Of a stretch of 63,459 bases of DNA, positions 3,676-57,790 are shown piece after piece; positions within the stretch are counted from its first letter, which is position 1, and each line of letters opens with the position of its first letter. Both the position numbers and the translations under genes were made by a program. The notes below the pieces were generated by a model. The model was not told where the DNA came from. It worked only from the letters and a program-made list of their open reading frames with translations, and did not search any database. Source of the stretch: Octopus bimaculoides (taxonomy: Eukaryota); NCBI RefSeq assembly GCF_001194135.2, contig NC_068988.1, positions 81,080,219 to 81,143,677 of the forward strand, written 5' to 3'.

Positions 3676-3690
3676 GCAAGNNNNNNNNNN

Positions 3691-8188: not shown

Positions 8189-8540
8189 GAGTGGCTGTGT
8201 GGTAAATAGCTTGCTTACCAACCACATGGTTCCGGGTTCAGTCCCACTGTGTGGCACCTTGAGCAAATGTCTTCTACTATAGTATCGGGCTACCCAAAGC
8301 CTTGTGAGTGGATTTGGTAGATGGAAACTGAAAGAAGCCTGTTGAGTATGTATATATATTTATGTGTGTATATGTCTGTGTTTGTCCCCCCACTATCCTT
8401 GTAACTCAGCAGTTCAGCAAAAGAGACTGATAGGATAAGTACTAGGCTTACAAAGAATAAGTCCTGGGGTCAGTTTGTTCGACTAAAGATGGTGCTCCAG
8501 CATGGCCACAGTCAAATGACTGAAACACGTAAAAGAGTAA
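8189..8540 (+). mobile_element. Full-length tRNA-type SINE, family A (Octopus-type)
   Basis: A-box-like TGGCTGTGTGG, B-box-like GGTTCAGTCCC, internal (TA/TG)n tract, 3' tail GACTGAAACACGTAAAAGAGTAA; several near-identical copies in the window. Confidence 0.9.
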
Positions 8541-10099
8541 GTAATTTAAGTAAGTATTTATTGATAATGAGTTTTGACAATGGCTGTCTACTTGTCTCTA
8601 CATTGATTGACAGCTCAGCAATCTATTTTTCTTGTCAAACTATTGTGAAAATAATCATTGGTTTAATCTGTAGAGCTCTTTATACAAATCATGAGGAGGC
8701 ACATTTCACCGTTGAATGAAGATGAGGAGGAGATGGTGCAGATTAACATTTTAATTAGCATTTTGTGAGTTTAAATTATTCCATTTGTCATCAGAGAATG
8801 TGTTATGCTAGGCAATAGCTTCTTCTCCAAATCTGTGGTCTTATGCTATAGTTAGACTTTAAAACAACCAGCTCTATCACCACATAGTACTTCAGTACAT
8901 AGCTGGACAGATTGTGGAGGATTTTTTGTAGAACATTATGCAGTATAAATGACTCATAAGACCGAATTCTAACAACCTGTAGACAGATGCCATTCTTTCA
9001 TTTATATATATATATATATATATATATAGTGCCTTTTCCTGTCTCCTCTCATGGCTCATCTACCTAGCGTTCATAATAATTTTTCTATCATCTTGGCTCA
9101 ACAGCCCTCACCGTTTGTTTTTACTGTCTTGTTCTCACTGTTCTGTTTTTGTTAACACTTTCACCCTCCTCAAAAAAACTCAAATTTTATTTAATTTGCT
9201 TTGCGGGAGCCATGCGCGTATTGTCCTTACCTTCGAAATGCGGAGTAGATGAAACAGGGACAACTGACGAAGAGGTATACCCTTTATGTCGCATGTCTCG
9301 TTTCTCTGTTTGTTTTTTTTTCAATGTTCGAAAAAATGTTTTTCATTGTGTTTAACATTTTTTTTTATGTCTTGTACCCATATATGCATATATATATATA
9401 TATATACATATATATGTAGGTATGTACATATACGTATGGATATATGCATATATTTATATATTATTTATATTATTATATATATATATTTAAAATAATAAGG
9501 GTGAAAAATTGAATATTAATTTGATTAATATCAATTTAAAACCAGTAACCCAGTGTATTGAAAAATCTGCAGATTCAGAAAAATTATATNNNNNNNNNNN
9601 NNNNNNNNNNNNNNNNNNNNNNNNNNNNNNNNNNNNNNNNNNNNNNNNNNNNNNNNNNNNNNNNNNNNNNNNNNNNNNNNNNNNNNNNNNNNNNNNNNNN
9701 NNNNNNNNNNNNNNNNNNNNNNNNNNNNNNNNNNNNNNNNNNNNNNNNNNNNNNNNNNNNNNNNNNNNNNNNNNNNNNNNNNNNNNNNNNNNNNNNNNNN
9801 NNNNNNNNNNNNNNNNNNNNNNNNNNNNNNNNNNNNNNNNNNNNNNNNNNNNNNNNNNNNNNNNNNNNNNNNNNNNNNNNNNNNNNNNNNNNNNNNNNNN
9901 NNNNNNNNNNNNNNNNNNNNNNNNNNNNNNNNNNNNNNNNNNNNNNNNNNNNNNNNNNNNNNNNNNNNNNNNNNNNNNNNNNNNNNNNNATATATATATA
10001 TATATAATATGGGTGGCTTATTAGCAATTTAACAACCTAAAGGCAAATTTATAGACATCACTAAAGTGACAGAGGGTACTAAGTAGTATATTTGTGAAT

Positions 10100-14974: not shown

Positions 14975-16207
14975 TAAGGAGAATAGCCTGGGCAAAGTTC
15001 AGAGAGCTCTTACCTCTGCTGGTGACAAAGGGCCTCTCGTCAGAGTAAAAGGCAGACTGTATGACGCATGTGTACGAACAGCCATGTTACATGGCAGTGA
15101 AACATGGGCCGTGACTGCTGAGGACATGCGTAAGCTCACAAGAAATGAAGCCAGTATGCTCCGATGGATGTGTAATGTCAGTGTGCATACTTGACAGAGT
15201 GAAAGTACCTTGAGAGAAAAGTTGGACCTAAGAAGCATCAGTTGTGGTGTGCAAGAGAGACAATTGCGCTGATATGGTCATGTGGCAAGAGTGGATGAGG
15301 ANNNNNNNNNNNNNNNNNNNNNNNNNNNNNNNNNNNNNNNNNNNNNNNNNNNNNNNNNNNNNNNNNNNNNNNNNNNNNNNNNNNNNNNNNNNNNNNNNNN
15401 NNNNNNNNNNNNNNNNNNNNNNNNNNNNNNNNNNNNNNNNNNNNNNNNNNNNNNNNNNNNNNNNNNNNNNNNNNNNNNNNNNNNNNNNNNNNNNNNNNNN
15501 NNNNNNNNNNNNNNNNNGAGAAAACCCAGCAAGCCCAGTGAGACCATAATCCGTGGCCTTTACCAGGGGTGTAGCCAGCCCACTTATGTGTACCTTTCCT
15601 TCTTTGGACAGTAAACTGTGCTTGTGAAGACCTGTTGAGGCAAGTGAAATTGAAATCGAACCAAATTTGATGACTGACACCCATGCCAACCTCTCCTTCA
15701 TTGGACACTAAACTCTGCTTGCGAAGACCTGTTGGGGCAAGTGAGATCGAAATCGTAATTGAACTAAATTCGATGACTGGCACCTGTGCCAATGGAGCGC
15801 TAACAGCACCATCCAAGCGTGATCATTGCCAGAGCAGCTGTCTGGCTTCCGTGCCAGTGGCACGTAAATAGCACCATTTGAGCGTGATCGTTTCCAGTGT
15901 CACCTTACTGGCACAGGAAAAAACATTCGAGTGAGGTCGTTGCCAGTGCTGCTCGACTGGTTTCTGTGCAGGTGGCATGTAAAAAACACCATTTTGAACG
16001 TGGCCATTGCCAGTACCGCCTGACTGGCCCTTGTGCTGGTGGCACGTAAAAGCACCCACTACACTCTCGGAGTGGTTGGCGTTAGGAAGGGCATCCAGCT
16101 GTAGAAACTCTGCTAGATCAGATTGGAGACTGGTGTAGCCATCTGGTTCACCAGTCTTCAGTCAAATCGTCCAACCCATGCTAGCATGGAAAGCGGACGT
16201 TAAACAA

Positions 16208-25296: not shown

Positions 25297-25718
25297 NNNN
25301 NNNNNNNNNNNNNNNNNNNNNNNNNNNNNNNNNNNNNNNNNNNNNNNNNNNNNNNNNNNNNNNNNNNNNNNNNNNNNNNNNNNNNNNNNNNNNNNNNNNN
25401 NNNNNNNNNNNNNNNNNNNNNNNNNNNNNNNNNNNNNNNNNNNNNNNNNNNNNNNNNNNNNNNNNNNNNNNNNNNNNNNNNNNNNNNNNNNNNNNNNNNN
25501 NNNNNNNNNNNNNNNNNNNNNNNNNNNNNNNNNNNNNNNNNNNNNNNNNNNNNNNNNNNNNNNNNNNNNNNNNNNNNNNNNNNNNNNNNNNNNNNNNNNN
25601 NNNNNNNNNNNNNNNNNNNNNNNNNNNNNNNNNNNNNNNNNNNNNNNNNNNNNNNNNNNNNNNNNNNNNNNNNNNNNNNNNNNNNNNNNNNNNNNNNNNN
25701 NNNNNNNNNNNNNNNNNN

Positions 25719-30715: not shown

Positions 30716-31388
30716 CTGTGTTTCTCAACCATTTTTTTTTTTTTTACCTATGGACCCCTTTGATTCCTATTTGATTTGGATGAACCCTCATAGACATTTG
30801 ATCTTTAAAAAATCCTGTTATATTTTTATAATTAAATATTATTATCAATTGTATCAAAAAAAGATTCTTTTACTCTTTTACTCTTTTACTTGTTTCAGTC
30901 ATTTGACTGCGGCCATGCTGGAGCACCGCCTTTAGTTGAGCAAATCGACCCCAGGACTTATTCTTTGTAAGCCTAGTACTTATTCTATCGGCCTCTTTTT
31001 GCCGAACCGCTAAGTTACGGGGATGTAAACACATCAGCATCGGTTGTCAAGCGATGATGGGGGGACAAACACAGACACACAAACACACACACATACATAT
31101 ATATATACATATATACGACAGGCTTCTTTCAGTTTCCGTCTACCAAATCCACTCACAAGGCTTTGGTCGGCCTGAGGCTATAGTAGAAGACACTTGCCCA
31201 AAGTGCCATGCAGTGGGACTGAACCCGGAACCATGTGGTTGGTAAGCAAGCTACTTACCACATAGCCACTCCTGTGCCTATTATTATTAACATATTTTGT
31301 ATTTGGTAGAGATATAAGCGATTTATTGCAGATAAATTTTAACAATATCTTATATGGATCCCATATGGACACCAGTTGAGAACCACTG
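30716..31388. mobile_element. hAT (Buster/Charlie-type) MITE with nested SINE
   Basis: Ends CTGTGTTTCTCAACC / AGTTGAGAACCACTG; flanks TTCTACAG and ATATACAC with central TA. It interrupts an RTE fragment at 30540-30715. Confidence 0.65.
30866..31278 (-). mobile_element. Full-length SINE family A
   Basis: Reverse complement of the 8189 element with a (TACTCTT)n tail; CpGs retained, so probably young. Confidence 0.92.
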
Positions 31389-35470: not shown

Positions 35471-36639
35471 TCTTACTTTTTCTTACCATGTCTATTACAT
35501 TACATTACATTATTTATTATTTTTATTTTTACCTATTTACTCTTATCTTATTTTGCCCTACTCTATTATTCTAACTGAATTTCCCACATGTTAGTTTCCT
35601 AACATTTGTACTCTCTGAAGAAGCCTTGAGGCTCAACCATTATCCAATCTCTGTCCAGTGTTTGTTCATCCCTGTATGTCACTGACGTAATGAGGATGAC
35701 TTGGAAGATTCCGAGGCCTCATGGTAGAAATGGCCGTAAGGGATTTGTATCTGTACACTGGTCTATTATTATTTATTCATCTCCTCCTCCTCCTCATCAT
35801 CATTGTTTAACGTCCGTTTTCCATGCTGGCATATATATGTGTACGCATTTATTGTCTGATCTCATTCGTTTACTTGTACAACTTAAACACATGTTTGTTA
35901 TCATTTGATAAATAGATATTGGAATGTTTACTGGCTGATGTTTGTCAATTTTATATCCTCTCCATTTTCTTATTTGCCTTATATATATATATGTATGTAT
36001 ATATATATAGTAAATTTTAGAGGTAATACTTGATAATTGCAAGCACCTGTATATGCCAGATAGTGGCCGGGGTGAAAGAATAAATTAAAAACGTAAAAAT
36101 AAAAAACAGAACACAAAGGATTCCGCGGTACATGTGTTTCAAGCTTTATAGTTGTTGCATCATTATATTGATATATAATTGATAGACAGGATGGTATAAA
36201 GCTATCTTCAGCCACAAATATTTTCTTTCCCAAGTATTATATCACAAAGAAGAAATCACCAAGAAAAAAGACTATATATATATAGTAAATTTTAGNNNNN
36301 NNNNNNNNNNNNNNNNNNNNNNNNNNNNNNNNNNNNNNNNNNNNNNNNNNNNNNNNNNNNNNNNNNNNNNNNNNNNNNNNNNNNNNNNNNNNNNNNNNNN
36401 NNNNNNNNNNNNNNNNNNTGTATATATATACATGCTAAGCATTTTTCCCAGTATATTAATGATTTTGTCACCTTGTCAACGTCCTATGACTTATTAATGT
36501 TAAACACAGTGTCATTTAATTAATATTCTAATTCATGGTGATATGTGAGTGTGATGAGATGAAACGAGCTTTAATTGCCATGCTGATAGATATGATAAGG
36601 AGCAATTAGTATCTGGTAGAGAAAGTTAAGCTTGTACCA

Positions 36640-37790: not shown

Positions 37791-37975
37791 CAGCCTATCA
37801 GTTACCAGGTGGACTGGTACTAACTCAGGCGACAAGTTCTAAGTCAGGCAGCGTATAATTACGTTGACTGATTTAACGCATATACATTGCATGTGTAAAT
37901 TTATGTCAACCATCTTAAAAGGTGTAATATGAAACAAATAGTAGCCTTGATATGCAAATAAGGTTGGCGTAGCTA

Positions 37976-38322
37976 GGCACAGGCATGGCTGTGTAATAAG
38001 AAGCTTGCTTCCCAACCACATGGTTCTGAGTTCAGTCCCACTGCATGGCATCTTTGGCAAATGTCCTCTACTAGAGTCTTGGACCAACTAAAAGCCTTGT
38101 GAGTGGACTTGGTAGATGGAAACTAAATTAAGCCTATCACACACACACACACACACACACAAACACATTTCTGTGTGTGTGTCTTTGTGTCTGTTTTTGA
38201 TCCCTCCACTATTGATTGACAACCGATGTTGGTGTGTTTATGTCTCTGTAACTTAGTGGTTTGGCAATGAAAGACTGATAGAATAAGTACTAGGCTTACA
38301 AAGAATAAGCCTTGGGGTCGAA
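37976..38322 (+). mobile_element. SINE family A
   Basis: GGCACAGGCATGGCTGTG..AAG.AGCTTGCTTCCCAACCACATGGTTC.GAGTTCAGTCCCACTGC...GATAGAATAAGTACTAGGCTTACAAAGAATAAG. Confidence 0.9.
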
Positions 38323-38384: not shown

Positions 38385-38431
38385 NNNNNNNNNNNNNNNN
38401 NNNNNNNNNNNNNNNNNNNNNNNNNNNNNNN

Positions 38432-39628: not shown

Positions 39629-39970
39629 ACTCACATTATATGGCTGATATTTTCAACCAAGACATTACAACTGTATTTGATTTTTCAAGTGCTTCAATTC
39701 TGTGTATGTACATATATTCACTCAACTGTCGACATATATCAGTGGTTTCTCTCATTGTTTTGATAATGCCATTTTATATCATTAATAAAATGTCATCATT
39801 TTTGGCAACACAGTATATATATATATATATATATATATATNNNNNNNNNNNNNNNNNNNNNNNNNNNNNNNNNNNNNNNNNNNNNNNNNNNNNNNNNNNN
39901 NNNNNNNNNNNNNNNNNNNNNNNNNNNNNNNNNNNNNNNNTATATATATATATATAAATATATTAGTAAT

Positions 39971-42416: not shown

Positions 42417-44121
42417 GTGAACAAAATTATCTACGTGTAATTTGCTATTCAAAATTGGTCGTGTTTCAGTTATGAGGACCGACTCTTGTATTTGCTGTAA
42501 CGATGTGTCATTGGGGTGTCTAGACAGGATTTCTATGCTAATCTGGTCCAGTACACCACCATGTTGTTCTTTGGCATGCTGGTAGAGCACTGAGGTTTGT
42601 TCGTGGTTCTTGTAGTCCCTCCAATGTTCATTTACACACTCAAAATTCTCGCCGTCTTTCCGTTTTTACAATCACCATCCATACAGCTTATTCTGTAAAC
42701 CACATTTCTGGTTTTGCAGTTGATACCAGGACTATATTTGCACACAATGCAATTCTCTTCTACACACCTTGTCCTTCTGAAGGGGTATGTTTTGCATATT
42801 ATCGATCTAATGGATCTCCTTGGTTTTTCTATGACATTTATCTTCAACTTAGTACTTTTGAGGATTTTTCTGAATCTACGGGCCAGTTGTCCGTGTGGTG
42901 TGGCATCTATAAACATTACTCCTTGGAACCTGTTGGTATTGTACCACGTGTTCTTTCTGTTTGTTTTGTCACTAATTCTTTGTAGTCGATTCCACTGTTT
43001 ATTACGGTACCTAGGTTGTGTTCCATCTGTATCTTTGACAACAATCTCTTCAAATTTCTTGCTAGCTCCTTTGTACACTCGGATCCTATCTTTCTGGCTG
43101 TATCCCGAAAACTGCATGCGATGCATGAAGTCTTGTGTATGTCTTTGTCTCTCCCAGGGACTGCACAGGGGTGGGGGGATATGTTTCTCATTATTCTGAC
43201 TAAATCGGCTATTAATATATTAATTTTCACACTGTGTGATAGAGCTGAATTATTATGAATAACATACTTTGAAGATATAGGTTTCATATAATATGAGTGG
43301 AGGATTTGAACTTTGTCATTAATTGTTTCTAGCCAAAGTTCTGTGTCAAGTACCGGGAGTCTCTTGTTTAGGTGTCTTGTTGGGTAATCTATTGTTACCT
43401 TGATGCTCTGGTGTATTGCATTAGCTATATTCTGGATGTTTTCCATCACGATCTTCTCATTCTCTTCAGTCTGAATGTTTGATGGTGTTTTGACTCCGAT
43501 GTTAATGTCATCCACATATCTCCCGTACAGTTTGATTGTTATTGAGTGCTCCTCGAGAGTTTCTCTCAGCTTTTTGTCCCACCAGGTCATGAATAGGCTC
43601 GCTACGTCCCTGGATACACTGACACCAATAGCCGCTCCTTGGACCTGCATGTATGGATTTTCATTGAATTTAATTATATGGTTCTGCAGGGTGGTCTTCA
43701 GACTTGCACCTACAGCATGTGCAACCATTTTTCGTGTTTGGATATTATCCTCTGGGTCGTGGGTGGGTGTATTCCATCCATTCCAATGCTCTGCGGTGGT
43801 TTTTCTAGCAGCTGATGTGATCGTAGGTGGTCTACCCCGTCCTGACCTAGTGGGGCAGAATCTAGTTAGGTCGTGGTGATCTAAGTATTCATTATTATAA
43901 ACAAGCTTTAGGAGGAGGCCTAGTTCCCTTGTGTTCACTTCACGGAAGGTTACTTCACTTTCCAAAATAATTTCCACACATCTCTCTACGGCAAAGTCAA
44001 TGTCAATGGATGGATAGAGAGATACTACATCCATACTGCCTATAATACAACCTGTCAGGTCATGGGAGCAGTTACATTCATTGACTCTGCTGAGGAAGTC
44101 CTCTGTGTTTTCATGTATCAT
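42417..44121 (-). mobile_element. Penelope-like retroelement: RT, Cys-rich linker and GIY-YIG endonuclease; 5'-truncated, two frameshifts
   Basis: RT motifs IIGSMDVVSLYPSID, QVQGAAIG, RYVDDI, LPVLD; thumb YMKP..S..VIH..SAL; RMQFSGY; CVEENCIVC..C..NVVYRISC; EH..S.L.QH..EQH; QIQESVLI...P.LNSK. Confidence 0.93.
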
Positions 44122-45408: not shown

Positions 45409-47720
45409 TCATTGTGGTGTAGCTATCCTTGGCCATTTAATAAAATTATGAAGAATATTAACGGTGTCGAAGAATGTAGCTAACTCCAGAATCCACTTTA
45501 TTGTGTTAACCATGACAAGGTGCAACTGATGATTAAGACAATGAACATATGGTTTATGTTTTTTAAGTCGATTCTGAATTTTTCTTTGAATGCCATCTAT
45601 TTTGCCAGATATCATAGGAGCACCATCGTAGCATTGTGACAGCATATGCTTAGGAACAATGCCAAGGTAGGTTCATCCCTCAATTAACAAGTCAGCCAAT
45701 GTTACAGTATCATAATGTTGAGCAGTTGGCATTACAACTAAGTTTTCCAGAAACCTGCCATTTTTTCAAGTACTTAAAAACAATCACAATATTTTCAATA
45801 TTACTCAAGTCATGCGTTTCATCACATTTCAGCGTAAAGTAAAGAACATCGGAACATTTTATTTCATCGACAACAAGGCTGACATTGTATCTCCTCAGTG
45901 ATTTCATTTTGCATTGCTGCTGAAGTATAGGTCGTTTGTTTGTTTTTTTAATCATGCTGTAGCATTCCATTAGCTTTGAATCTTTCTCTAATGTTTATTG
46001 GAATAATTTCATAAAACAACTACAAAGCTGTGTCTCACCTTCCGAATAAAGATCTTCAAAAGCTTCATTTTCGTTTCCTCAACAAGGCAATTCATTTGCA
46101 CAAAGAAATGCACAATATCAACAATTGAATTGATATAGTAATGGTTTTTACTCAATTGATCATTTTAAAAAATTGAAGATACGAATGTTACGGATAAATG
46201 CTTGTTGTGTACACTCGAGTGAAATTCCCTTTTCCCCTTTATTTTATATATGTGCATTCGAATGTAGCTGGTAACAGTTAGCCTTTGGCCACTATTTAAA
46301 TACCATTGTGTCCACTACTCTGATTGGTTGGTATTGGCACAATTTGCCTCTTACTCAATTGTGCCAACTGCCGAGTATAACCAATCAGAGAGCCTAAATA
46401 CGATCACGTGAGACAGCCTGTTCTCAACCCAGTTTTTGAGCCTACAGCTCCTTATAATAACTCATCTACTCCTAGTTTCAAGGTCTTTTGGTTCCAGACC
46501 TTTTAAGGTCTAGCCACTGACCACACAAGACACAGCCAGTTACAGCTACAACACCACAGCAGCCATGTTGAGATTCACCAACTTCGTCCAACAGCATTAC
46601 AGCAACCTCTGTCTTCATTGCCTCCATCATATCATGTTCTCAACGTTGTCAACATCATCTCTCTTTGTACACAGCTCAGCTAGCATTTCACCCAGGTTCC
46701 AACACTTCGCTGTTCATGAATTACTTCATGGATCAACAGCGAATATACAACCTGCATGAACTCCTGTATCAAGTGACCCAGGTAGCAGTATCATAGCTAT
46801 GACTTCATGTTTGACATGTACCTGCAACCAGCTCAGCATCATGGCCGCAACTTCTTGATACTGTATTTCAACTACTGTGTACTAATGACTATGAACTGGT
46901 ATAATTTATCTTACTTGTGTCTATGAACTTACCTCTCATTTTGATGGCTATAAACACTTTCACTGTCTCCTTCTGCATTGCCATCCTTATATGTACTTAA
47001 CACATATGCATACATCTATGCTCACATGCACATATACATCTATGTTCTCATGACGGTCTGTCTATTATTCTGTATACATGACACACACACAGACACACGT
47101 TTACATGTCAATAAATCTTCTCTTAATCATTCTACGTGGTTGTGTCTCCTTTTTCTCTCTGGCACTTATAAGTACCATTCAATTTATATATTTATTGCAA
47201 GGGCCAATTCTCATCTAGCATCACACGGTCCCTTACACGCTGTTGGCGTTCCTTCCATTTTACTATAGCTTGGATATGGGCTGCAGAGTTTGCATGATTA
47301 TTCAAACCTTTTGCATGATGCCATTTAAAATACCCATCTTTAATAAAGCAAGTATCTGCTTGAGCAGAAGTGCTAAAGTGCTGACAAGGAAAACAAAACA
47401 AGAATTTCTTTGGAAGTGAATACTCTAACCATGGACGACCGGAATACCAGCTTGATGAGAAGTCACGTTTCTGATTTCCATAAATCTTTGGATCAAAGTT
47501 TGCTAGAACTGGCTGCACTGGTTGGCAGTTGACCTGTCCTAGATCATACAATGAGGGTGTCAAAGACTCTGCAAAACTAATACTACCTTCCTTGCGCTGC
47601 GAAACTTCTTTGTTTGCAATTCTCTTCTGTTTAGCTTTTGATGAATCAGATTCGAAATTCAGCGATGATTGCTTCAGTTCTCTTCTTCAGCATCAGTTCA
47701 TTATTATACCAACACTCCGT
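45409..47720 (-). mobile_element. hAT transposase relic (TTF-type zinc finger plus DUF4371; ZMYM1-like), split by an insertion
   Basis: RDFSSSWYSGRPWLEYS....FCFPC..F..KW..L..H..S.AH..A..W (ZnF_TTF); FLCANELP.GNE; KCDETHDLSNIE; QCYDGAPMISG..G.Q; YVHCLNHQLHL. Confidence 0.9.
46186..47237 (+). mobile_element. Probable solo LTR inserted in the hAT ORF
   Basis: 1052 bp, TGTTACGG...CCCTTACA ends, TATTTAAA, paired CCAAT boxes, CACGTG, and AATAAA ~125 bp before the end. The hAT reading continues on both sides. The TSD is poor (CGAA vs CGCT). Confidence 0.55.
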
Positions 47721-48765: not shown

Positions 48766-49226
48766 CATAAATATATAGGGGTCAGCATGAGTTGCTTCAC
48801 CAACNNNNNNNNNNNNNNNNNNNNNNNNNNNNNNNNNNNNNNNNNNNNNNNNNNNNNNNNNNNNNNNNNNNNNNNNNNNNNNNNNNNNNNNNNNNNNNNN
48901 NNNNNNNNNNNNNNNNNNNNNNNNNNNNNNNNNNNNNNNNNNNNNNNNNNNNNNNNNNNNNNNNNNNNNNNNNNNNNNNNNNNNNNNNNNNNNNNNNNNN
49001 NNNNNNNNNNNNNNNNNNNNNNNNNNNNNNNNNNNNNNNNNNNNNNNNNNNNNNNNNNNNNNNNNNNNNNNNNNNNNNNNNNNNNNNNNNNNNNNNNNNN
49101 NNNNNNNNNNNNNNNNNNNNNNNNNNNNNNNNNNNNNNNNNNNNNNNNNNNNNNNNNNNNNNNNNNNNNNNNNNNNNNNNNNNNNNNNNNNNNNNNNNNN
49201 NNNNNNNNNNNNNNNNNNNNNNNNNN

Positions 49227-50229: not shown

Positions 50230-50645
50230 TACTCTTTTACTTGTTTCAGTCATTTAACTGTGGCCATGCTGGAGCACCGCCTTTTAGTTGAATAAATCAA
50301 CCCCAGGACTTATTCTTTGGAAGCCTAGCACGTATTCTATCAGTCTCTTTTTCCGAACTGCTAAGTTACGGGGACGTAAACACACCAGCATCGGTTGTCA
50401 AGCGATGTTGGGGGGGGGGAGGGGGCAAATACAGACACACAAAACATATACACACACATACATATATATATATACATATATACGACGGGCTTCTTTCAGT
50501 TTCCGTCTACCAAATCCACTCACAAGGCTTTGGTTGGCCCGAGGCTATAGTAGAAGACACTTGCCCAAGGTGCCACACAGTGGGACTGAACCCGGAACCA
50601 TGTGGTTGGTAAGCAAGCTACTTACCACACAGCCACTCCTATGCC
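50230..50645 (-). mobile_element. Full-length SINE family A
   Basis: Near-identical to 30866-31278. Confidence 0.92.
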
Positions 50646-51140: not shown

Positions 51141-51284
51141 CAGTGGTTTGCAACCTTCTCACTACCAAAGACACCTTTTATTTAAATGAATTTTCTTATG
51201 GACCCTAGGATATTGAAAGGTCTGTTAGCTTAACTACCTTTGTGGACCATCAGAGGTCTGCAGACCACAGGTTGGGAACAACTG
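51141..51284. mobile_element. 144-bp hAT (Buster/Charlie-type) MITE
   Basis: TIRs CAGTGGTTTGCAACC / GGTTGGGAACAACTG; 8-bp TSD ATATATAT / ATATATGT. Confidence 0.85.
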
Positions 51285-51955
51285 ATATATGTCATCATCG
51301 ATAATTAACATCCATGTTCCATGCTGGCATAGATTGGACAGTTTGACAAAGAAGCAATGGATCAAAGGACTGCATCATGCTCCAGTATCTACTTTGGCAT
51401 GTTTTCTGTGGCTAGATGCATGCATGCATGTACACACACACACATGTACATGCGCGTGCACACACACACACACACACAAACAAACAAAAGTCAGGAGTTA
51501 TGAGAAGTGAATATATGTATTTAATCATTTGACATCCTTGAATTGTTGGTATAACTATGATGTTCTGGTGAGCTGTTGAGCTAGCTTTCTTTATTTGTAT
51601 TGATTTGTGAATATACAGTTGTACCGTATAATGGTGAGCATACATTTTAATGCAAACATATACACATAATTTCTTCCATACTGAAATTATTATTACATGT
51701 AGAATGCTGCAAAATGGTTGTAATCCTAAAGATGTCAAGTAGTAAAAGAAATATATTCACCTCTCATACCTCCTGACTATTTATGTCTTATATACTTCTC
51801 AGGAAATAGTTTCATCAATCAGATCTTCTGGATTTCAACTGTATAGTCCCTCTGCAACAAACTTCTCTGTATTGGACTATTATTACAGTTAGCCAAGTCC
51901 ATAAGAGGAACTTTCTGTGATAGCCATACAATTCCTTGAATCCATATCTTAAACT

Positions 51956-51990
<35 letters not shown>

Positions 51991-52078
51991 TAGAAAAGAC
52001 AACAAAAGAAAGAAAGAGACCTCGATATTATGTAAATAGAGGAATTTATCTGTAAAAATATGTGACACTTATTTGGTA

Positions 52079-52148
52079 GCCATGATAAAACTCTGAGTTT
52101 CAGATGCCGGGGCGGAAACCTATGCTGCCATCTCTTCAGTTATCTGGC
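52079..52148 (-). ncRNA. Type I hammerhead ribozyme motif within a repeat (~51985-52300)
   Basis: Minus strand: GCCA-GATAA-CTGAAGA-GATG...CATC-T-GAAA-CTC-a-GAG-TT-TTATC-a-TGGC. All three stems pair; conserved core CUGAAGA/GAAA; GUU cleavage triplet; one extra U before GAAA. Confidence 0.75.
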
Positions 52149-52419
52149 CATTGAAAATTCCCGTGAAAATGACCGTTAAACAAAGGGAAATTACTGTGTG
52201 GTTGACCGTTATTAAGACAAAAGAGCTATAGACTGCTAAGTAAGGGGAGGGAGTAAAGGTAAGGGAGTAATACTATGAACTTTTTTACTCCCTTTACCTA
52301 TTATCAATTGAGCTCTTAATTACTGCAAATTTATTCTTTTGATATTTATACATCGATTCTCTGTAAGGATGTATAGATGTGTATATTAATTACATTTTTC
52401 TTTTTTATCTTGTAGGAAA

Positions 52420-52680
52420 ATGCAGATTTTTATAATGACATGGGAAAGCAGGACTATTACTATAGAAGTTCATACTTCAGATACTATTGGAAATGTAAAA
52501 TCTAAAATTCAGAATCACCAAGGTATTCCAACAGATCACCAACATTTGCTCTATAATGGAAAAGAATTAGAAGATGACAAAACACTTTTTGCCTATGAAA
52601 TTGAAAACAAGACAACACTTTTCTTAGTTTATCGACTGCCAGGTGGTATGAAGATTTCTCAGAAAACTCTAATGAGTTAA
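52420..52680 (+). CDS. Divergent ubiquitin-like protein (76-aa Ub fold ending RLPGG plus a 10-aa tail)
   Basis: Ungapped hand alignment to ubiquitin gives 43/76 identities. A strong splice acceptor (TTTTTCTTTTTTATCTTGTAG) lies 4 nt before the ATG, and AATAAA is at 52862-52867. Confidence 0.85.
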   Translation: MQIFIMTWESRTITIEVHTSDTIGNVKSKIQNHQGIPTDHQHLLYNGKELEDDKTLFAYEIENKTTLFLVYRLPGGMKISQKTLMS

Positions 52681-52800
52681 ATGTTGAAATATCAAACAAT
52701 CTAAAAGTAAACATTAAATACAAAGAATACATTCTATTATATGAACAGCATTTGATCAATTAAACAATCAAATGAAGAAGTTAGTACTTCTCTGATGTCA
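52648..52800 (+). pseudogene. Decayed second ubiquitin-like unit directly after GG
   Basis: MKISQKTL resembles MQIFVKTL. After a frameshift, NVEISNNLKVNIKYKEYILLYEQHLI resembles [29 protein letters not shown], followed by stops. Confidence 0.7.
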
Positions 52801-53854
52801 TATCAATACATTGTTAATCATATAAATTCGATGTGTATAATTAACTGTAGTAAATTAACCAAAATAAACATGTTTATAATTAAGTACATAAATCACAATT
52901 TGCGTTTCATTCTGGGCACAAATTTTACCTCCTGAATTTCTTGTGATAATCTTTTTGAATCTGTACTTTGTAGTTTGTCAATCTCAAGTAGTTTTTTGTC
53001 AAGAAGCCCTTTCCTCAACAGTCTGCTCCTAATTGACTTACACTAAATATTTCATGTAGTGCATCATGTTGGATTCAAAAAAGTTAACTTGTTAGTAGTG
53101 TATCAGCTTGACTATAAAATAGCAGTTGTTAATGATATATTTCTCCAACATGTTCCACTATAAGGCCTTGTCTTTGTATATACCAGATGCTATGTAATTT
53201 ATTGGCTGTCTATAGTTAATATGGAAAATACCTATATGCTAGCTTGTACACTGAGGTAGTTTGACAATAATATTACAGTAGATCCAAGAAGCTAATTGGT
53301 TAGCTTTTTGAATAATTTCACCAGAAATTTCAAACAACATAAGTGATTTGAAAAGTATTTTCTATGTTAGATTTCTGAAAAATTTTCAGATGCAAACAGT
53401 TAAAATTCAATTTAAAATGAAAAATAGTAATAAATTAAAGGCTTCTGTGCAAGGATTTATAGAAATTTTCTTCAAACCATAGTGAAGTGTCCTATTATTT
53501 AGAAAATGAATGGCTAATTTGGTTGAAGCGTCTTATATTTACTTAATGTCCAAGAGGACACTCAACACCATATTAGTTCTATGCTACATAAATGATGGCA
53601 GGCAGATTTTACTGCATTATGAATTCTATATTTCCAATAAGTTTATTTTCAACATATTTTCGATAAGTTATTACTTTATTGAGAGGTGTTAAAAGTTGAT
53701 CCAGTTTAGCAAATTGTGCGTTTATTTGACCTCCTTAGGAGAATGGTATTTATTGGGGAATTTTCCGTAACATTTTCTGAAGTTTAACAACCATTTATAC
53801 CCCCTGACTTGTTTGTTGAGTTACACTTTGCAACCATTGTGGAAAGGTTTAGAC

Positions 53855-56729: not shown

Positions 56730-57790
56730 CATCATCATCATCATAGTTTAACATCTGCTTTCCATGCTGGCATAGGTTGGACAGTTTGACCGAGGACTGG
56801 CAAGCCAGGAGGCTGCACCAGGCTCCAATCTGATCTGGCAAGGTTTCTGCAGCTGGATGTCCTTNNNNNNNNNNTGATCTGGCAAGGTTTCTGCAGCTGG
56901 ATGTCCTTCCTAATGCCAACCACTCTGAAAGTGTAGTGGGTGCTTTTTACATGCCTCTGACACAGGGGCCAGTCAGGCGGTACTGGCATTGACCATGCTC
57001 GAATGGTGCTTTTTACATACTATTAGCACGGGTGCCAGTCAGGCATCAGCCATGTCAATGATTTCACTTGACTCACAAGTCTTCTCAAGCACAGTATATT
57101 GCCCAATGATTGAAGAGTACTCTTAAATGAGCCAGTTATGTAACACTGGCATAGGCCACAGTTATGGTTCACTTGGCTTGCTGGGTCTTCTCAAGCACAG
57201 CATATTTCCAAAAGTGTTGGTCATTTGTCATTGCCACCGTGAGGCCCAATGTTCAAAGGTCGTGCTTCACCACCTCATCCCAAGTCTTCATGGGTCTACC
57301 TCTTCCATAGGTTTCCTCCACTGTTAGGGTGTGACACTTTTTGAGACAGCTGTCCTCATCCATACGCAACAAATGACCATAGCAGCACAGTTGTCTCTGT
57401 TGCACATCATACCTGATGCTTCTTATGTCCAACTTTTCTCTCAGAGTGCTTACACTCTGTCATGTACGCACACTGACATTACACATCCAGCAGAGCATAC
57501 CAGCTTCATTTCTTGCAAGCTTACACATGTCCTCAGCAGTTACAGCCTATGTTATACTGCAGTGTAGCATGGCAGTTCGCACACATGCCTCATACAGTCT
57601 ACCTTTGACTCCCTACTTTATCTGCTTGATCATACAAGTGACTGGTACATATCCTACTTTGCCACAGATTTTCAGTATCTTGACAACTAATGTTGATGGT
57701 CCTGCTGCTTTCCTTGACTTCATCTCCTTCATAACCACTTTCAACCATCTGTCAGCCTTTATAGCAGGTTTCACAGGTGGGTTTACTAAG
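56730..57790 (-). mobile_element. RTE LINE C-terminus and 3' UTR
   Basis: LYEACVRTAMLHCS..AVTAEDMCKLARNEAGMLCWM (antisense of ORF 57416..57817), and the same 3' tail as 16075-16205. Confidence 0.9.

What the first reader, a model, noticed from the sequence alone, without database searches (positions are those of the whole stretch)
52420..52680. Divergent ubiquitin-like modifier candidate with a remodelled surface
It is exactly 76 aa to a di-Gly, with no indels relative to ubiquitin, yet only 43/76 identical; true ubiquitin is almost invariant. K27, K29, K48, R72 and G75-G76 are kept. K6, K11, K33 and K63 are lost. The L8/I44/H68/V70 patch becomes W/L/F/V, and R42H, L71Y and R74P change the E1/DUB-contact tail. 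An intact frame despite 33 substitutions, while the next unit decayed, suggests selection. It could be a lineage-specific UBL, a non-conjugatable decoy, or a UBL domain exon of a larger protein (the acceptor is in frame and G/GTATGA at the GG could be a donor).
Basis: partly seen in the sequence, partly recalled or inferred. Interest (0 to 1): 0.7.

Follow-up and report, generated by a model that had tools for sequence, protein, structure and literature searches.

The report
Divergent ubiquitin copy in octopus
An 86-codon reading frame left over from a duplicated polyubiquitin gene encodes a ubiquitin-fold protein only 57% identical to ubiquitin; two Octopus species share it intact, and selection clearly shaped it in the past, but recently it has changed as fast as the DNA around it, so whether it still works is open.

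Summary
Window 52420-52680 (+) is an 86-codon ORF: a 76-residue unit aligned to ubiquitin without gaps (43/76 identical), ending in Gly-Gly, then 10 codons of a second repeat and a stop. A decayed second repeat follows (z about 4.4).

It is the surviving first repeat of an old duplicate of a polyubiquitin gene. Octopus vulgaris has the syntenic orthologue, with the same frame and the same stop.

Past selection is well supported. Neutral simulations from a ubiquitin coding sequence keep the frame in only 1-3% of runs. About 62 substitutions would be needed, which predicts about 8 indels. None of 2,110 surviving simulations reaches the candidate's ubiquitin-family profile score. Only 2 of 14 core residues changed, both conservatively. 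AlphaFold2 gives pLDDT 92, and the model matches ubiquitin at TM 0.91-0.96.

Present-day selection is not shown. Between the two species dN/dS is 0.77, and the ORF diverges 5.7% against 6.7% for its immediate flanks.

The idea of a ubiquitin-like exon in a larger protein is not supported. Expression is untested.

Verdict: a lineage-restricted ubiquitin paralogue, already catalogued but uncharacterised, which is either a fast-evolving gene or a recently relaxed one. Interest is moderate.

The parts
52395..52415 (+). Polypyrimidine tract plus AG (TTTTTCTTTTTTATCTTGTAG), a 3' splice acceptor-like site 4 nt upstream of the ATG. It is probably the end of the 5'-UTR intron inherited from the parent polyubiquitin gene.
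   Evidence: Read directly from the sequence. It is identical in O. vulgaris over the last 27 nt before the ATG. The O. vulgaris gene model splices into it. Human UBC has a 5'-UTR intron (PMC3680475). That the site was inherited is an inference.
52420..52647 (+). Ubiquitin-like unit of 76 codons, from M1 to G75-G76 (tail LVYRLPGG).
   Evidence: It is 43/76 identical to ubiquitin with no gaps. PF00240 scores 78.3 bits. AlphaFold2 gives pLDDT 92 and pTM 0.81. The best Foldseek matches are ubiquitin chains at TM 0.91-0.96. The O. vulgaris orthologue is 88% identical in protein.
52648..52680 (+). Ten-codon C-terminal extension (MKISQKTLMS), which is the start of ubiquitin repeat 2, followed by a TAA stop.
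   Evidence: O. vulgaris reads MQICQKTLMS with a stop at the same position.
52648..52803 (+). Decayed second ubiquitin repeat, covering about residues 1-59, with frameshifts, a deletion and stops.
   Evidence: The frameshift-aware alignment scores 43, against 26.6 +/- 3.7 for shuffles. Between the species the part after the stop (52681-52803) shows 13.8% mismatches and an indel.
52863..52868 (+). AATAAA hexamer 183 nt after the stop, a possible polyadenylation signal.
   Evidence: It is conserved in O. vulgaris in the alignment. Its function was not tested, and such hexamers are common in this AT-rich DNA.
37929..37955 (+). Homologue of the 20-nt first coding exon of the O. vulgaris gene model. 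In the window it is disrupted.
   Evidence: O. vulgaris reads ATGAAACAAAATTTGCCTTG|GTATGC (L001 10001-10020). The window reads ATGAAACAAATAGTAGCCTTGATATGC, with a 1-nt insertion and the donor GT changed to AT.

Best explanation
The locus is what remains of an old, DNA-level duplicate of a polyubiquitin gene. It keeps the acceptor of the 5'-UTR intron, repeat 1, and the wreck of repeat 2.

Repeat 1 was kept as a small protein-coding gene, a lineage-restricted ubiquitin paralogue. Selection held the reading frame, the start codon, the hydrophobic core and the C-terminal Gly-Gly. Half of the surface was replaced, including the L8/I44/H68 patch and two of the three arginines (R42, R74) that guide ubiquitin's tail into the E1 enzyme.

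The predicted product is an 86-residue precursor with a ubiquitin fold and a 10-residue tail after Gly-Gly. Because R42, I44, L71 and R74 are changed, the cell is unlikely to handle it as ubiquitin. If it acts at all, it most likely does so through its new surface, either as a free ubiquitin-like binder or decoy, or as an inefficient or specialised modifier.

Constraint on the amino-acid sequence is weak overall and may have been relaxed recently, especially on the window's lineage.

Shown here: origin, fold, orthology and past selection. Inferred: translation, processing and mode of action.
For: Origin:
- Ubiquitin is the nearest relative at every level.
- A second, decayed repeat follows head-to-tail.
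- An intron acceptor directly precedes the ATG. A processed retrocopy would not carry one.

Orthology:
- The flanks are colinear with O. vulgaris chromosome OX597821.1 at about 87-93% identity.
- The ORF has the same length and stop there.
- There is a single copy in each 41-63 kb locus.
- No paralogue sharing 5-residue words was found among 5.8 billion protein clusters.

Past selection:
- Under three neutral mutation models, only 1.2-2.8% of simulated ubiquitin coding sequences reach 33 replacements with start and frame intact. Only 19-30% of those survivors keep GG.
- About 62 nucleotide substitutions are needed. At 0.14 gap openings per mismatch, that predicts about 8 indels where none is seen.
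- The candidate's score against a profile of 593 diverse ubiquitin-like repeats is 106.8, against 74-78 +/- 7 in 2,110 simulated survivors (maximum 98.2).
- Only 2 of 14 core positions changed (V5I, L15I), against 5.6 expected (P = 0.02-0.035).

Fold: pLDDT 92, with ubiquitin as the top structural match.

Intactness since the species split: with 15 substitutions, the chance of no stop is about 0.43 (about 5% per substitution) and the chance of no indel is 0.19. Jointly that is about 0.08 under neutrality. None of the 9 replacements in the 76-residue unit hits the core.

Handling by ubiquitin enzymes:
- R42, R72 and R74 contact the UBA1 crossover loop, and the I44 patch binds the adenylation domain (PMC12355090).
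- R42, I44, K48 and G75-G76 are the mutation-sensitive positions in yeast (PMC4862753).
- Here R42H, I44L and R74P are changed, while K48, R72 and GG are kept.
Against: - Between the two species the ORF is no better conserved than its surroundings: 5.7% against 6.7% mismatches (Fisher P = 0.66).
- dN/dS is 0.77 and indistinguishable from 1 (P = 0.72).
- Strong constraint (dN/dS of 0.2 or less) would predict about 2 replacements where 9 are seen (Poisson P < 0.001, my arithmetic).
- All five window-lineage replacements (E24G, A28S, P38T, Q40H, D58A) move away from the ubiquitin state. They lower the profile score from about 117 to 106.8, as neutral drift predicts (simulated mean 107.6).
- No expression evidence could be obtained. 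The O. vulgaris model comes from a pipeline that mixes transcripts, protein alignments (including the O. bimaculoides proteome) and ab initio calls (PMC10700109), so it does not prove transcription.
- The model's upstream exon is not conserved.
- The DNA immediately upstream is rearranged between the species.
- Only two species could be compared.
Confidence: 0.5

Rival explanations
1. It is a recently dead gene, a unitary pseudogene in the making. The ubiquitin paralogue was functional for most of its history, but constraint was lost around or after the split of the two Octopus lineages. The frame is still open only because too little time has passed.
For: - dN/dS is 0.77, and the ORF's divergence equals the flanks'.
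- The window lineage's score loss matches neutral drift.
- The upstream exon of the O. vulgaris model is broken in the window.
- There is an upstream inversion, and each species carries its own insertions within 130 bp of the ATG.
- Only two databases carry the protein, each as an uncharacterised prediction.
- An open frame in both species has a probability of about 0.08 under neutrality, which is not negligible.
Against: - The frame, start, GG and all 14 core positions are untouched in both lineages. That is about 68 My of summed branch length, given a split about 34 Mya (PMC10700109).
- The adjacent repeat-2 remnant collected 13.8% mismatches and an indel over the same time.
- The long-term regime also looks like 'fast surface, fixed core', so a dN/dS near 0.8 need not mean death.
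Confidence: 0.35
2. It is a ubiquitin-like domain exon of a larger multi-exon protein. An upstream coding exon would be spliced in through the acceptor, or the exon would be spliced out at G|GTATGA to downstream exons.
For: - An acceptor-like site lies in frame 4 nt before the ATG, and GT follows the first G of the GG codons.
- The O. vulgaris model adds 8 residues from an upstream exon.
Against: - The upstream exon is only 20 nt. In the window it is frame-shifted and has lost its donor.
- The O. vulgaris model terminates at the same TAA.
- No other gene is called within the 41-kb O. vulgaris locus.
- GGT-GGT-ATG is the normal junction between ubiquitin repeats, and what follows is recognisably repeat 2.
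- No further ubiquitin-like or other Pfam-recognisable coding ORF was found among those tested nearby.
Confidence: 0.05
3. It has been a neutrally decaying polyubiquitin pseudogene since the duplication, and its open frame is luck.
For: - Ubiquitin pseudogenes are abundant in many genomes (PMC7066184).
- The recent evolutionary rate is neutral-like.
Against: - Frame survival in the simulations is 1-3%, and lower still (about 0.3%) when GG retention is also required. The chance of no indel is about 2e-4, taken as exp(-8.6).
- The profile score lies beyond all 2,110 neutral survivors.
- The core is spared.
- The neighbouring repeat did decay.
- There is no mosaic of ubiquitin-identical stretches that would point to gene conversion: identity is 61% in the N-terminal half and 53% in the C-terminal half.
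Confidence: 0.03

Closest known systems
Canonical ubiquitin and polyubiquitin genes (UBB/UBC type)
   Same: - The unit has the same length (76 residues), no indels, the same predicted fold and a C-terminal Gly-Gly.
- K27, K29, K48 and R72 are retained.
- The repeats are arranged head-to-tail.
- An intron acceptor lies just before the ATG, as with the 5'-UTR intron of UBC (PMC3680475).

   Different: - Identity is only 57%, whereas ubiquitin differs at 3 positions between yeast and human (PMC4862753).
- K6, K11, K33 and K63 are lost.
- The L8/I44/H68 patch, R42, L71 and R74 are changed.
- Only one repeat is intact. The second is truncated by a stop after 10 codons and has decayed.
Ubiquitin variants encoded by 'pseudogenes' (human UBBP4, Ub-KEKS; PMC7066184)
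   Same: Both are duplicates of a polyubiquitin gene that encode a non-canonical ubiquitin with an intact Gly-Gly. In both cases it is an open question whether an annotated or overlooked copy yields a working variant.
   Different: Ub-KEKS differs from ubiquitin at 4 positions and has been shown to be expressed and conjugated. This unit differs at 33 positions, including E1-contact residues, and neither expression nor conjugation has been shown.
NEDD8, as a yardstick for a separate modifier
   Same: Its distance from ubiquitin is about the same: NEDD8 is 44/76 identical to ubiquitin and this unit is 43/76. Both are 76 residues long and end in GG.
   Different: - It is not NEDD8: identity is 26/76, and position 72 is Arg rather than the Ala that specifies the NEDD8 E1 (PMC12355090).
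- NEDD8 is ancient and conserved. This protein is known only from Octopus and evolves fast.
Engineered ubiquitin variants (UbVs) that act as inhibitors or binders
   Same: Both have a ubiquitin scaffold with a conserved core and a rewritten binding surface. Such variants appear among the structural matches (3mtn, 4i6l). This is the model for the 'decoy or binder' reading.
   Different: UbVs are laboratory products selected against a known target. Here the target is unknown, and so is whether one exists.
Tandem di-UBL modifiers (ISG15, FAT10)
   Same: They have two ubiquitin-like units in tandem, fast sequence evolution and a C-terminal GG. The two-unit ancestor of this locus had that layout.
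   Different: Here the second unit is destroyed, and the GG of unit 1 is followed by a 10-residue remnant rather than by a folded domain. No sequence affinity to ISG15 or FAT10 was seen: ubiquitin chains fill the listed top matches.

Membership tests
Ubiquitin family (Pfam PF00240, beta-grasp fold) | Match to the family profile above the curated cut-off | tested here: met
   78.3 bits against a cut-off of 25.4, covering residues 3-73
Ubiquitin family (Pfam PF00240, beta-grasp fold) | Beta-grasp fold | tested here: met
   AlphaFold2 gives pLDDT 92 and pTM 0.81, with strands at 2-7, 12-16, 41-45 and 66-71 and a helix at 23-34. Foldseek's top hits are ubiquitin chains at TM 0.91-0.96. This is a prediction only.
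Canonical ubiquitin | Near-invariant sequence (3 differences between yeast and human) | tested here: not met
   33 of 76 positions differ. Yardstick from PMC4862753.
Canonical ubiquitin | Residues needed for UBA1 charging and essential function: R42, I44, K48, R72, G75 and G76, with R74 as a further crossover-loop contact | tested here: not met
   K48, R72 and G75-G76 are kept. R42H, I44L and R74P are changed. Residue roles are from PMC4862753 and PMC12355090.
Polyubiquitin gene | Uninterrupted head-to-tail ubiquitin repeats in one ORF | tested here: not met
   There is one intact repeat. The second stops after 10 codons and carries frameshifts. No further repeats occur in the window or in the O. 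vulgaris locus.
Conjugatable (type I) ubiquitin-like modifier | C-terminal Gly-Gly, exposed by processing of a precursor | tested here: inconclusive
   The sequence has ...RLPGG followed by a 10-residue tail. Whether a protease removes the tail is unknown.
Conjugatable (type I) ubiquitin-like modifier | Activation by an E1 and attachment to substrates | not testable with these tools
   This needs biochemistry or proteomics.
NEDD8 | Ala72 and NEDD8-type sequence | tested here: not met
   Identity is 26/76, and position 72 is Arg (PMC12355090).
Processed (retro-copied) pseudogene | No intron-derived sequence at the 5' edge, and a poly(A) tract at the 3' edge | tested here: not met
   A polypyrimidine-AG acceptor abuts the coding sequence. 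No A-run is seen in the 700 nt after the stop.
Non-processed pseudogene | Frame-disrupting lesions | tested here: not met
   There are none in repeat 1 in either species. They are present only in repeat 2.
Non-processed pseudogene | Neutral evolution (dN/dS about 1, rate equal to the flanks) | tested here: inconclusive
   dN/dS is 0.77, with 9 non-synonymous against 3 synonymous changes. The ORF diverges 5.7% against 6.7% for the flanks. This is compatible with neutrality, but long-term neutrality is rejected. Only one species pair was available.

The most novel reading that the evidence does not exclude
Octopuses carry a lineage-specific, conjugation-competent ubiquitin-like modifier born from a polyubiquitin duplicate. 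It would have a rewritten recognition surface and an LPGG tail, and would be charged by a non-canonical route (for example a UBA6-like or other E1). That would mark a set of substrates invisible to ubiquitin readers, and would leave an LPGG rather than a GG remnant after trypsin.
Probability: 0.1. Interest if true: 0.7.

Novelty: new member of a known kind. Interest (0 to 1): 0.35.

Why it matters
Ubiquitin is one of the most conserved proteins known, so a copy that has replaced 43% of its residues while keeping fold, frame and Gly-Gly is a natural experiment in how far the scaffold can be repurposed.

If it is expressed, it would be a cephalopod-restricted addition to the ubiquitin-like repertoire. 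It would also be a naturally evolved counterpart of engineered ubiquitin variants. In proteomic studies its tryptic remnant (LPGG, because R74 is Pro) would be distinguishable from ubiquitin's.

If it is not expressed, it is a well-dated example of a gene caught between long-term selection and decay. It would also be a caution that the two database entries for it are predictions only.

Tried and rejected
1. Exhaustive HMMER search of 1.84 billion representatives. The best 150 were all multi-repeat polyubiquitin-like proteins, with at most 58% identity. Single-unit relatives were buried, so no further orthologues were found.
2. Word-indexed search of 5.8 billion clusters. It returned only the window's own product, the O. 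vulgaris orthologue and an unrelated 75-aa metagenomic ubiquitin-like fragment. The candidate shares no 5-residue word with canonical ubiquitin; the longest identical run is 4.
3. Exact look-ups. No contig is on record for the window's protein. The unspliced 86-aa O. vulgaris version is not in the collection. No transcript-derived copy was found, so nothing can be said about expression.
4. DNA-level alignment of repeat 1 against the downstream DNA. It was not significant (score 57 against 48.7 +/- 6.8). Only the protein-level, frameshift-aware alignment detects repeat 2.
5. Gene conversion as the cause of the intact frame. Rejected, because there are no long ubiquitin-identical stretches and identity is similar in the two halves.
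6. Capture inside a transposable element. No support: the ORF lies in single-copy DNA colinear between the species from 52296 to the end of the window.
7. Pfam scan of seven long neighbouring ORFs. This gave one sub-threshold zinc-finger hit only. The neighbourhood looks repeat-rich and gene-poor.
8. Dating the duplication from repeat 2. Its aligned codons are about 40% identical, which would imply an age many times the 34-My species split. I judged this too unreliable to use, because the alignment is optimised and the ancestral state is unknown.
9. Literature search for an octopus polyubiquitin or ubiquitin-like gene of this kind. Nothing relevant came up.

Full report
**1. What is there**

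Window 52420-52680 (+) is an ATG-to-TAA ORF of 86 codons. Its first 76 residues align to canonical ubiquitin without a gap. They are 43/76 identical and 56/76 similar, tblastn E = 9e-26.

- K27, K29, K48, R72 and G75-G76 are kept.
- K6M, K11R, K33H and K63N are lost.
- L8W, I44L and H68F are changed, and V70 is kept.
- R42H, L71Y and R74P are present.

After Gly-Gly come ten codons (MKISQKTLMS) and a stop. A polypyrimidine-AG tract ends 4 nt before the ATG (52395-52415).

Pfam PF00240 matches at 78.3 bits, against a cut-off of 25.4. Among solved structures, ubiquitin itself is the closest sequence. AlphaFold2 gives pLDDT 92, and the model superposes on ubiquitin chains at TM 0.91-0.96.

The unit is as far from ubiquitin as NEDD8 is (43 against 44 of 76 identical). 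It is not NEDD8, to which it is only 26/76 identical.

**2. The neighbouring 'decayed unit' is real**

A frameshift-tolerant protein-to-DNA alignment of ubiquitin to 52648-52803 scores 43. Shuffles give 26.6 +/- 3.7, with a maximum of 38. The alignment has 20 of 50 identical codons, at least 3 frameshifts, a 3-residue deletion and in-frame stops. A plain DNA alignment of unit 1 to the downstream DNA is not significant.

No other ubiquitin-like unit exists in the window. The locus is therefore acceptor + repeat 1 + wreck of repeat 2.

An intron acceptor abutting the ATG is what a DNA-level copy of a polyubiquitin gene with a 5'-UTR intron would carry. Such an intron is documented for human UBC (PMC3680475). 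A processed retrocopy would not carry it, and no poly(A) tract follows the ORF. That the octopus parent gene has this intron is an inference, which I could not check.

**3. Orthologue**

The word-indexed protein search returned only three entries:
- the window's own product, which is already in UniRef;
- a 94-aa Octopus vulgaris protein (CAI9726747.1, named 'family'), 87% identical;
- an unrelated metagenomic fragment.

The O. vulgaris gene lies on chromosome OX597821.1. The window is colinear with that locus at about 87-93% identity over tens of kilobases. The window therefore comes from another Octopus species; the level of divergence suits O. bimaculoides, but I cannot confirm that.

The orthologous ORF (L001 30769-31029) has the same length, frame and stop. 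The O. vulgaris model adds 8 residues from a 20-nt exon 21 kb upstream. In the window that exon has a 1-nt insertion, and its donor GT is AT. So the extension is not conserved, and the protein starts at the ubiquitin M1.

The O. vulgaris annotation merged transcripts, protein alignments (including the O. bimaculoides proteome) and ab initio predictions (PMC10700109). It is therefore not evidence of expression. No other gene is called in the 41-kb O. vulgaris locus.

**4. Long-term evolution: selection acted**

I simulated neutral nucleotide substitution from a ubiquitin coding sequence until 33 residues had changed. The transition/transversion ratio (2.03) came from the flanks, and base composition came from the window. 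I also ran an unbiased model and a model with random ancestral codons. Results:
- Start and frame survive in 1.2-2.8% of runs.
- Only 19-30% of the survivors keep Gly-Gly.
- About 62 substitutions are needed. The flanks show 0.14 gap openings per mismatch, so about 8 indels would be expected and none is seen.

I then scored the sequences against a profile built from 593 distinct ubiquitin-like repeats taken from diverse representatives. The candidate scores 106.8. The 2,110 simulated survivors average 74-78 with SD about 7, and their maximum is 98.2.

I took 14 residues as the hydrophobic core, from my own knowledge of the ubiquitin structure: I3, V5, I13, L15, V17, I23, V26, I30, L43, L50, L56, I61, L67 and L69. 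Only V5I and L15I changed, against 5.6 expected (P = 0.02-0.035).

There is no mosaic pattern suggesting gene conversion. A purely neutral history since the duplication is therefore very unlikely. For most of its history, repeat 1 was a selected, folded, Gly-Gly-ended protein with a freely changing surface.

**5. Recent evolution: no constraint detectable**

Between the two species the ORF has 15 differences in 261 nt, which is 5.7%. For comparison:
- the immediate flanks show 6.7% (Fisher P = 0.66);
- about 9.8 kb of colinear flank shows 5.6%.

In the 76-codon unit, Nei-Gojobori counts are 9 non-synonymous and 3 synonymous changes. That gives dN 0.051, dS 0.067 and dN/dS 0.77, with P = 0.72 against 1. 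Strong constraint (dN/dS of 0.2 or less) would predict about 2 replacements (Poisson P < 0.001, my arithmetic).

Polarised with ubiquitin as the outgroup, the window lineage made five replacements away from the ubiquitin state: E24G, A28S, P38T, Q40H and D58A. Its profile score fell from about 117 in the inferred ancestor to 106.8. Neutral drift predicts 107.6 +/- 4.1. The O. vulgaris copy scores 115.1.

On the other side, three things speak for continued constraint:
- The probability that neither lineage acquired a stop is about 0.43, at about 5% per substitution. The probability of no indel is 0.19. Jointly that is about 0.08.
- None of the 9 replacements in the unit touches the core; by chance that outcome has P of about 0.16.
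- The repeat-2 remnant next door accumulated 13.8% mismatches and an indel over the same time.

So the recent data neither demonstrate nor exclude continuing selection for 'frame plus core'. They do exclude ordinary strong purifying selection on the whole sequence.

**6. How it would work**

This section is inference. If translated, the product is an 86-residue precursor with a ubiquitin fold.

Ubiquitin's tail is guided into UBA1 by R42, R72 and R74, and the I44 patch binds the adenylation domain (PMC12355090). In yeast, R42, I44, K48 and G75-G76 are the positions most sensitive to mutation (PMC4862753). Here R72, K48 and Gly-Gly remain, but R42H, I44L, L71Y and R74P do not.

I therefore expect poor charging by the canonical E1, and possibly poor trimming of the 10-residue tail. 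That favours a free ubiquitin-like binder or decoy acting through a new surface (W8/L44/F68/V70) over a bona fide ubiquitin substitute. A specialised modifier with its own route is the less likely but more interesting alternative.

**7. Comparison with known things**

- The closest concept is the ubiquitin variants encoded by polyubiquitin 'pseudogenes', such as UBBP4 (Ub-KEKS), which has four substitutions and is expressed and conjugated (PMC7066184). The octopus unit is eight times more diverged and is untested.
- It belongs to the ubiquitin family by profile and by predicted fold.
- It is not canonical ubiquitin, not a polyubiquitin, not NEDD8 and not a processed pseudogene.
- It is catalogued in UniRef and NCBI only as an unnamed prediction.

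**8. Verdict**

Past selection and orthology hold. Current function is undecided. The larger-protein option is not supported.
- My best estimates are 0.5 for a still-maintained fast-evolving ubiquitin paralogue, 0.35 for a recently relaxed or dying gene, and small probabilities for the rest.
- Novelty: a new member of a known kind.
- Interest is moderate (0.35). It would rise sharply if transcripts, peptides or LPGG-modified lysines were found.

Noticed in passing
window 51233-51987 (with 51988-52295); L001 29303-30644: The roughly 0.75-kb segment just upstream of the ubiquitin-like ORF matches O. vulgaris in reverse orientation at 92.8% identity, so there is a small inversion between the species. 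Between it and the ORF each species has its own insert: an (AT)n tract plus a short inverted repeat in the window, and a long palindrome in O. vulgaris. Only 124 bp upstream of the ATG is shared and colinear.
   Followed up: partly
window 42632-44121 (-): A 401-aa ORF containing a ...YGRYVDD... motif, which resembles reverse-transcriptase motif C, overlaps a 164-aa ORF. Neither has a Pfam hit. This is probably a retroelement remnant inside what is an intron of the O. vulgaris gene model.
   Followed up: partly
window 47192-47563 (-): A 123-aa ORF gives a sub-threshold match to zf-C17orf113 (25.4 bits against a cut-off of 29.5). It is possibly a transposase-derived zinc-finger fragment.
   Followed up: no
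window 8189-8540, 30866-31293, 37986-38319, 50230-50640: A short interspersed repeat of about 300-400 bp is present in several copies in both the window and the O. vulgaris locus, at 70-86% identity. One copy directly follows the O. vulgaris 'first exon'.
   Followed up: no
window 3681-3690, 9590-9989, 15302-15517, 25297-25718, 36296-36418, 38385-38431, 39841-39940, 48805-49226, 56865-56874: There are nine runs of N (assembly gaps, 1,750 bases in all), several of them bordered by (TA)n microsatellites. The ubiquitin-like locus itself is free of gaps.
   Followed up: no
P0003 (JGI metagenome contig, 1.1 kb): This is a 75-aa 'ubiquitin' that is 57% identical to the candidate, with a one-residue deletion and an LRLRR end instead of LRGG. 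It is an unrelated divergent or decayed ubiquitin copy from an unknown eukaryote.
   Followed up: no
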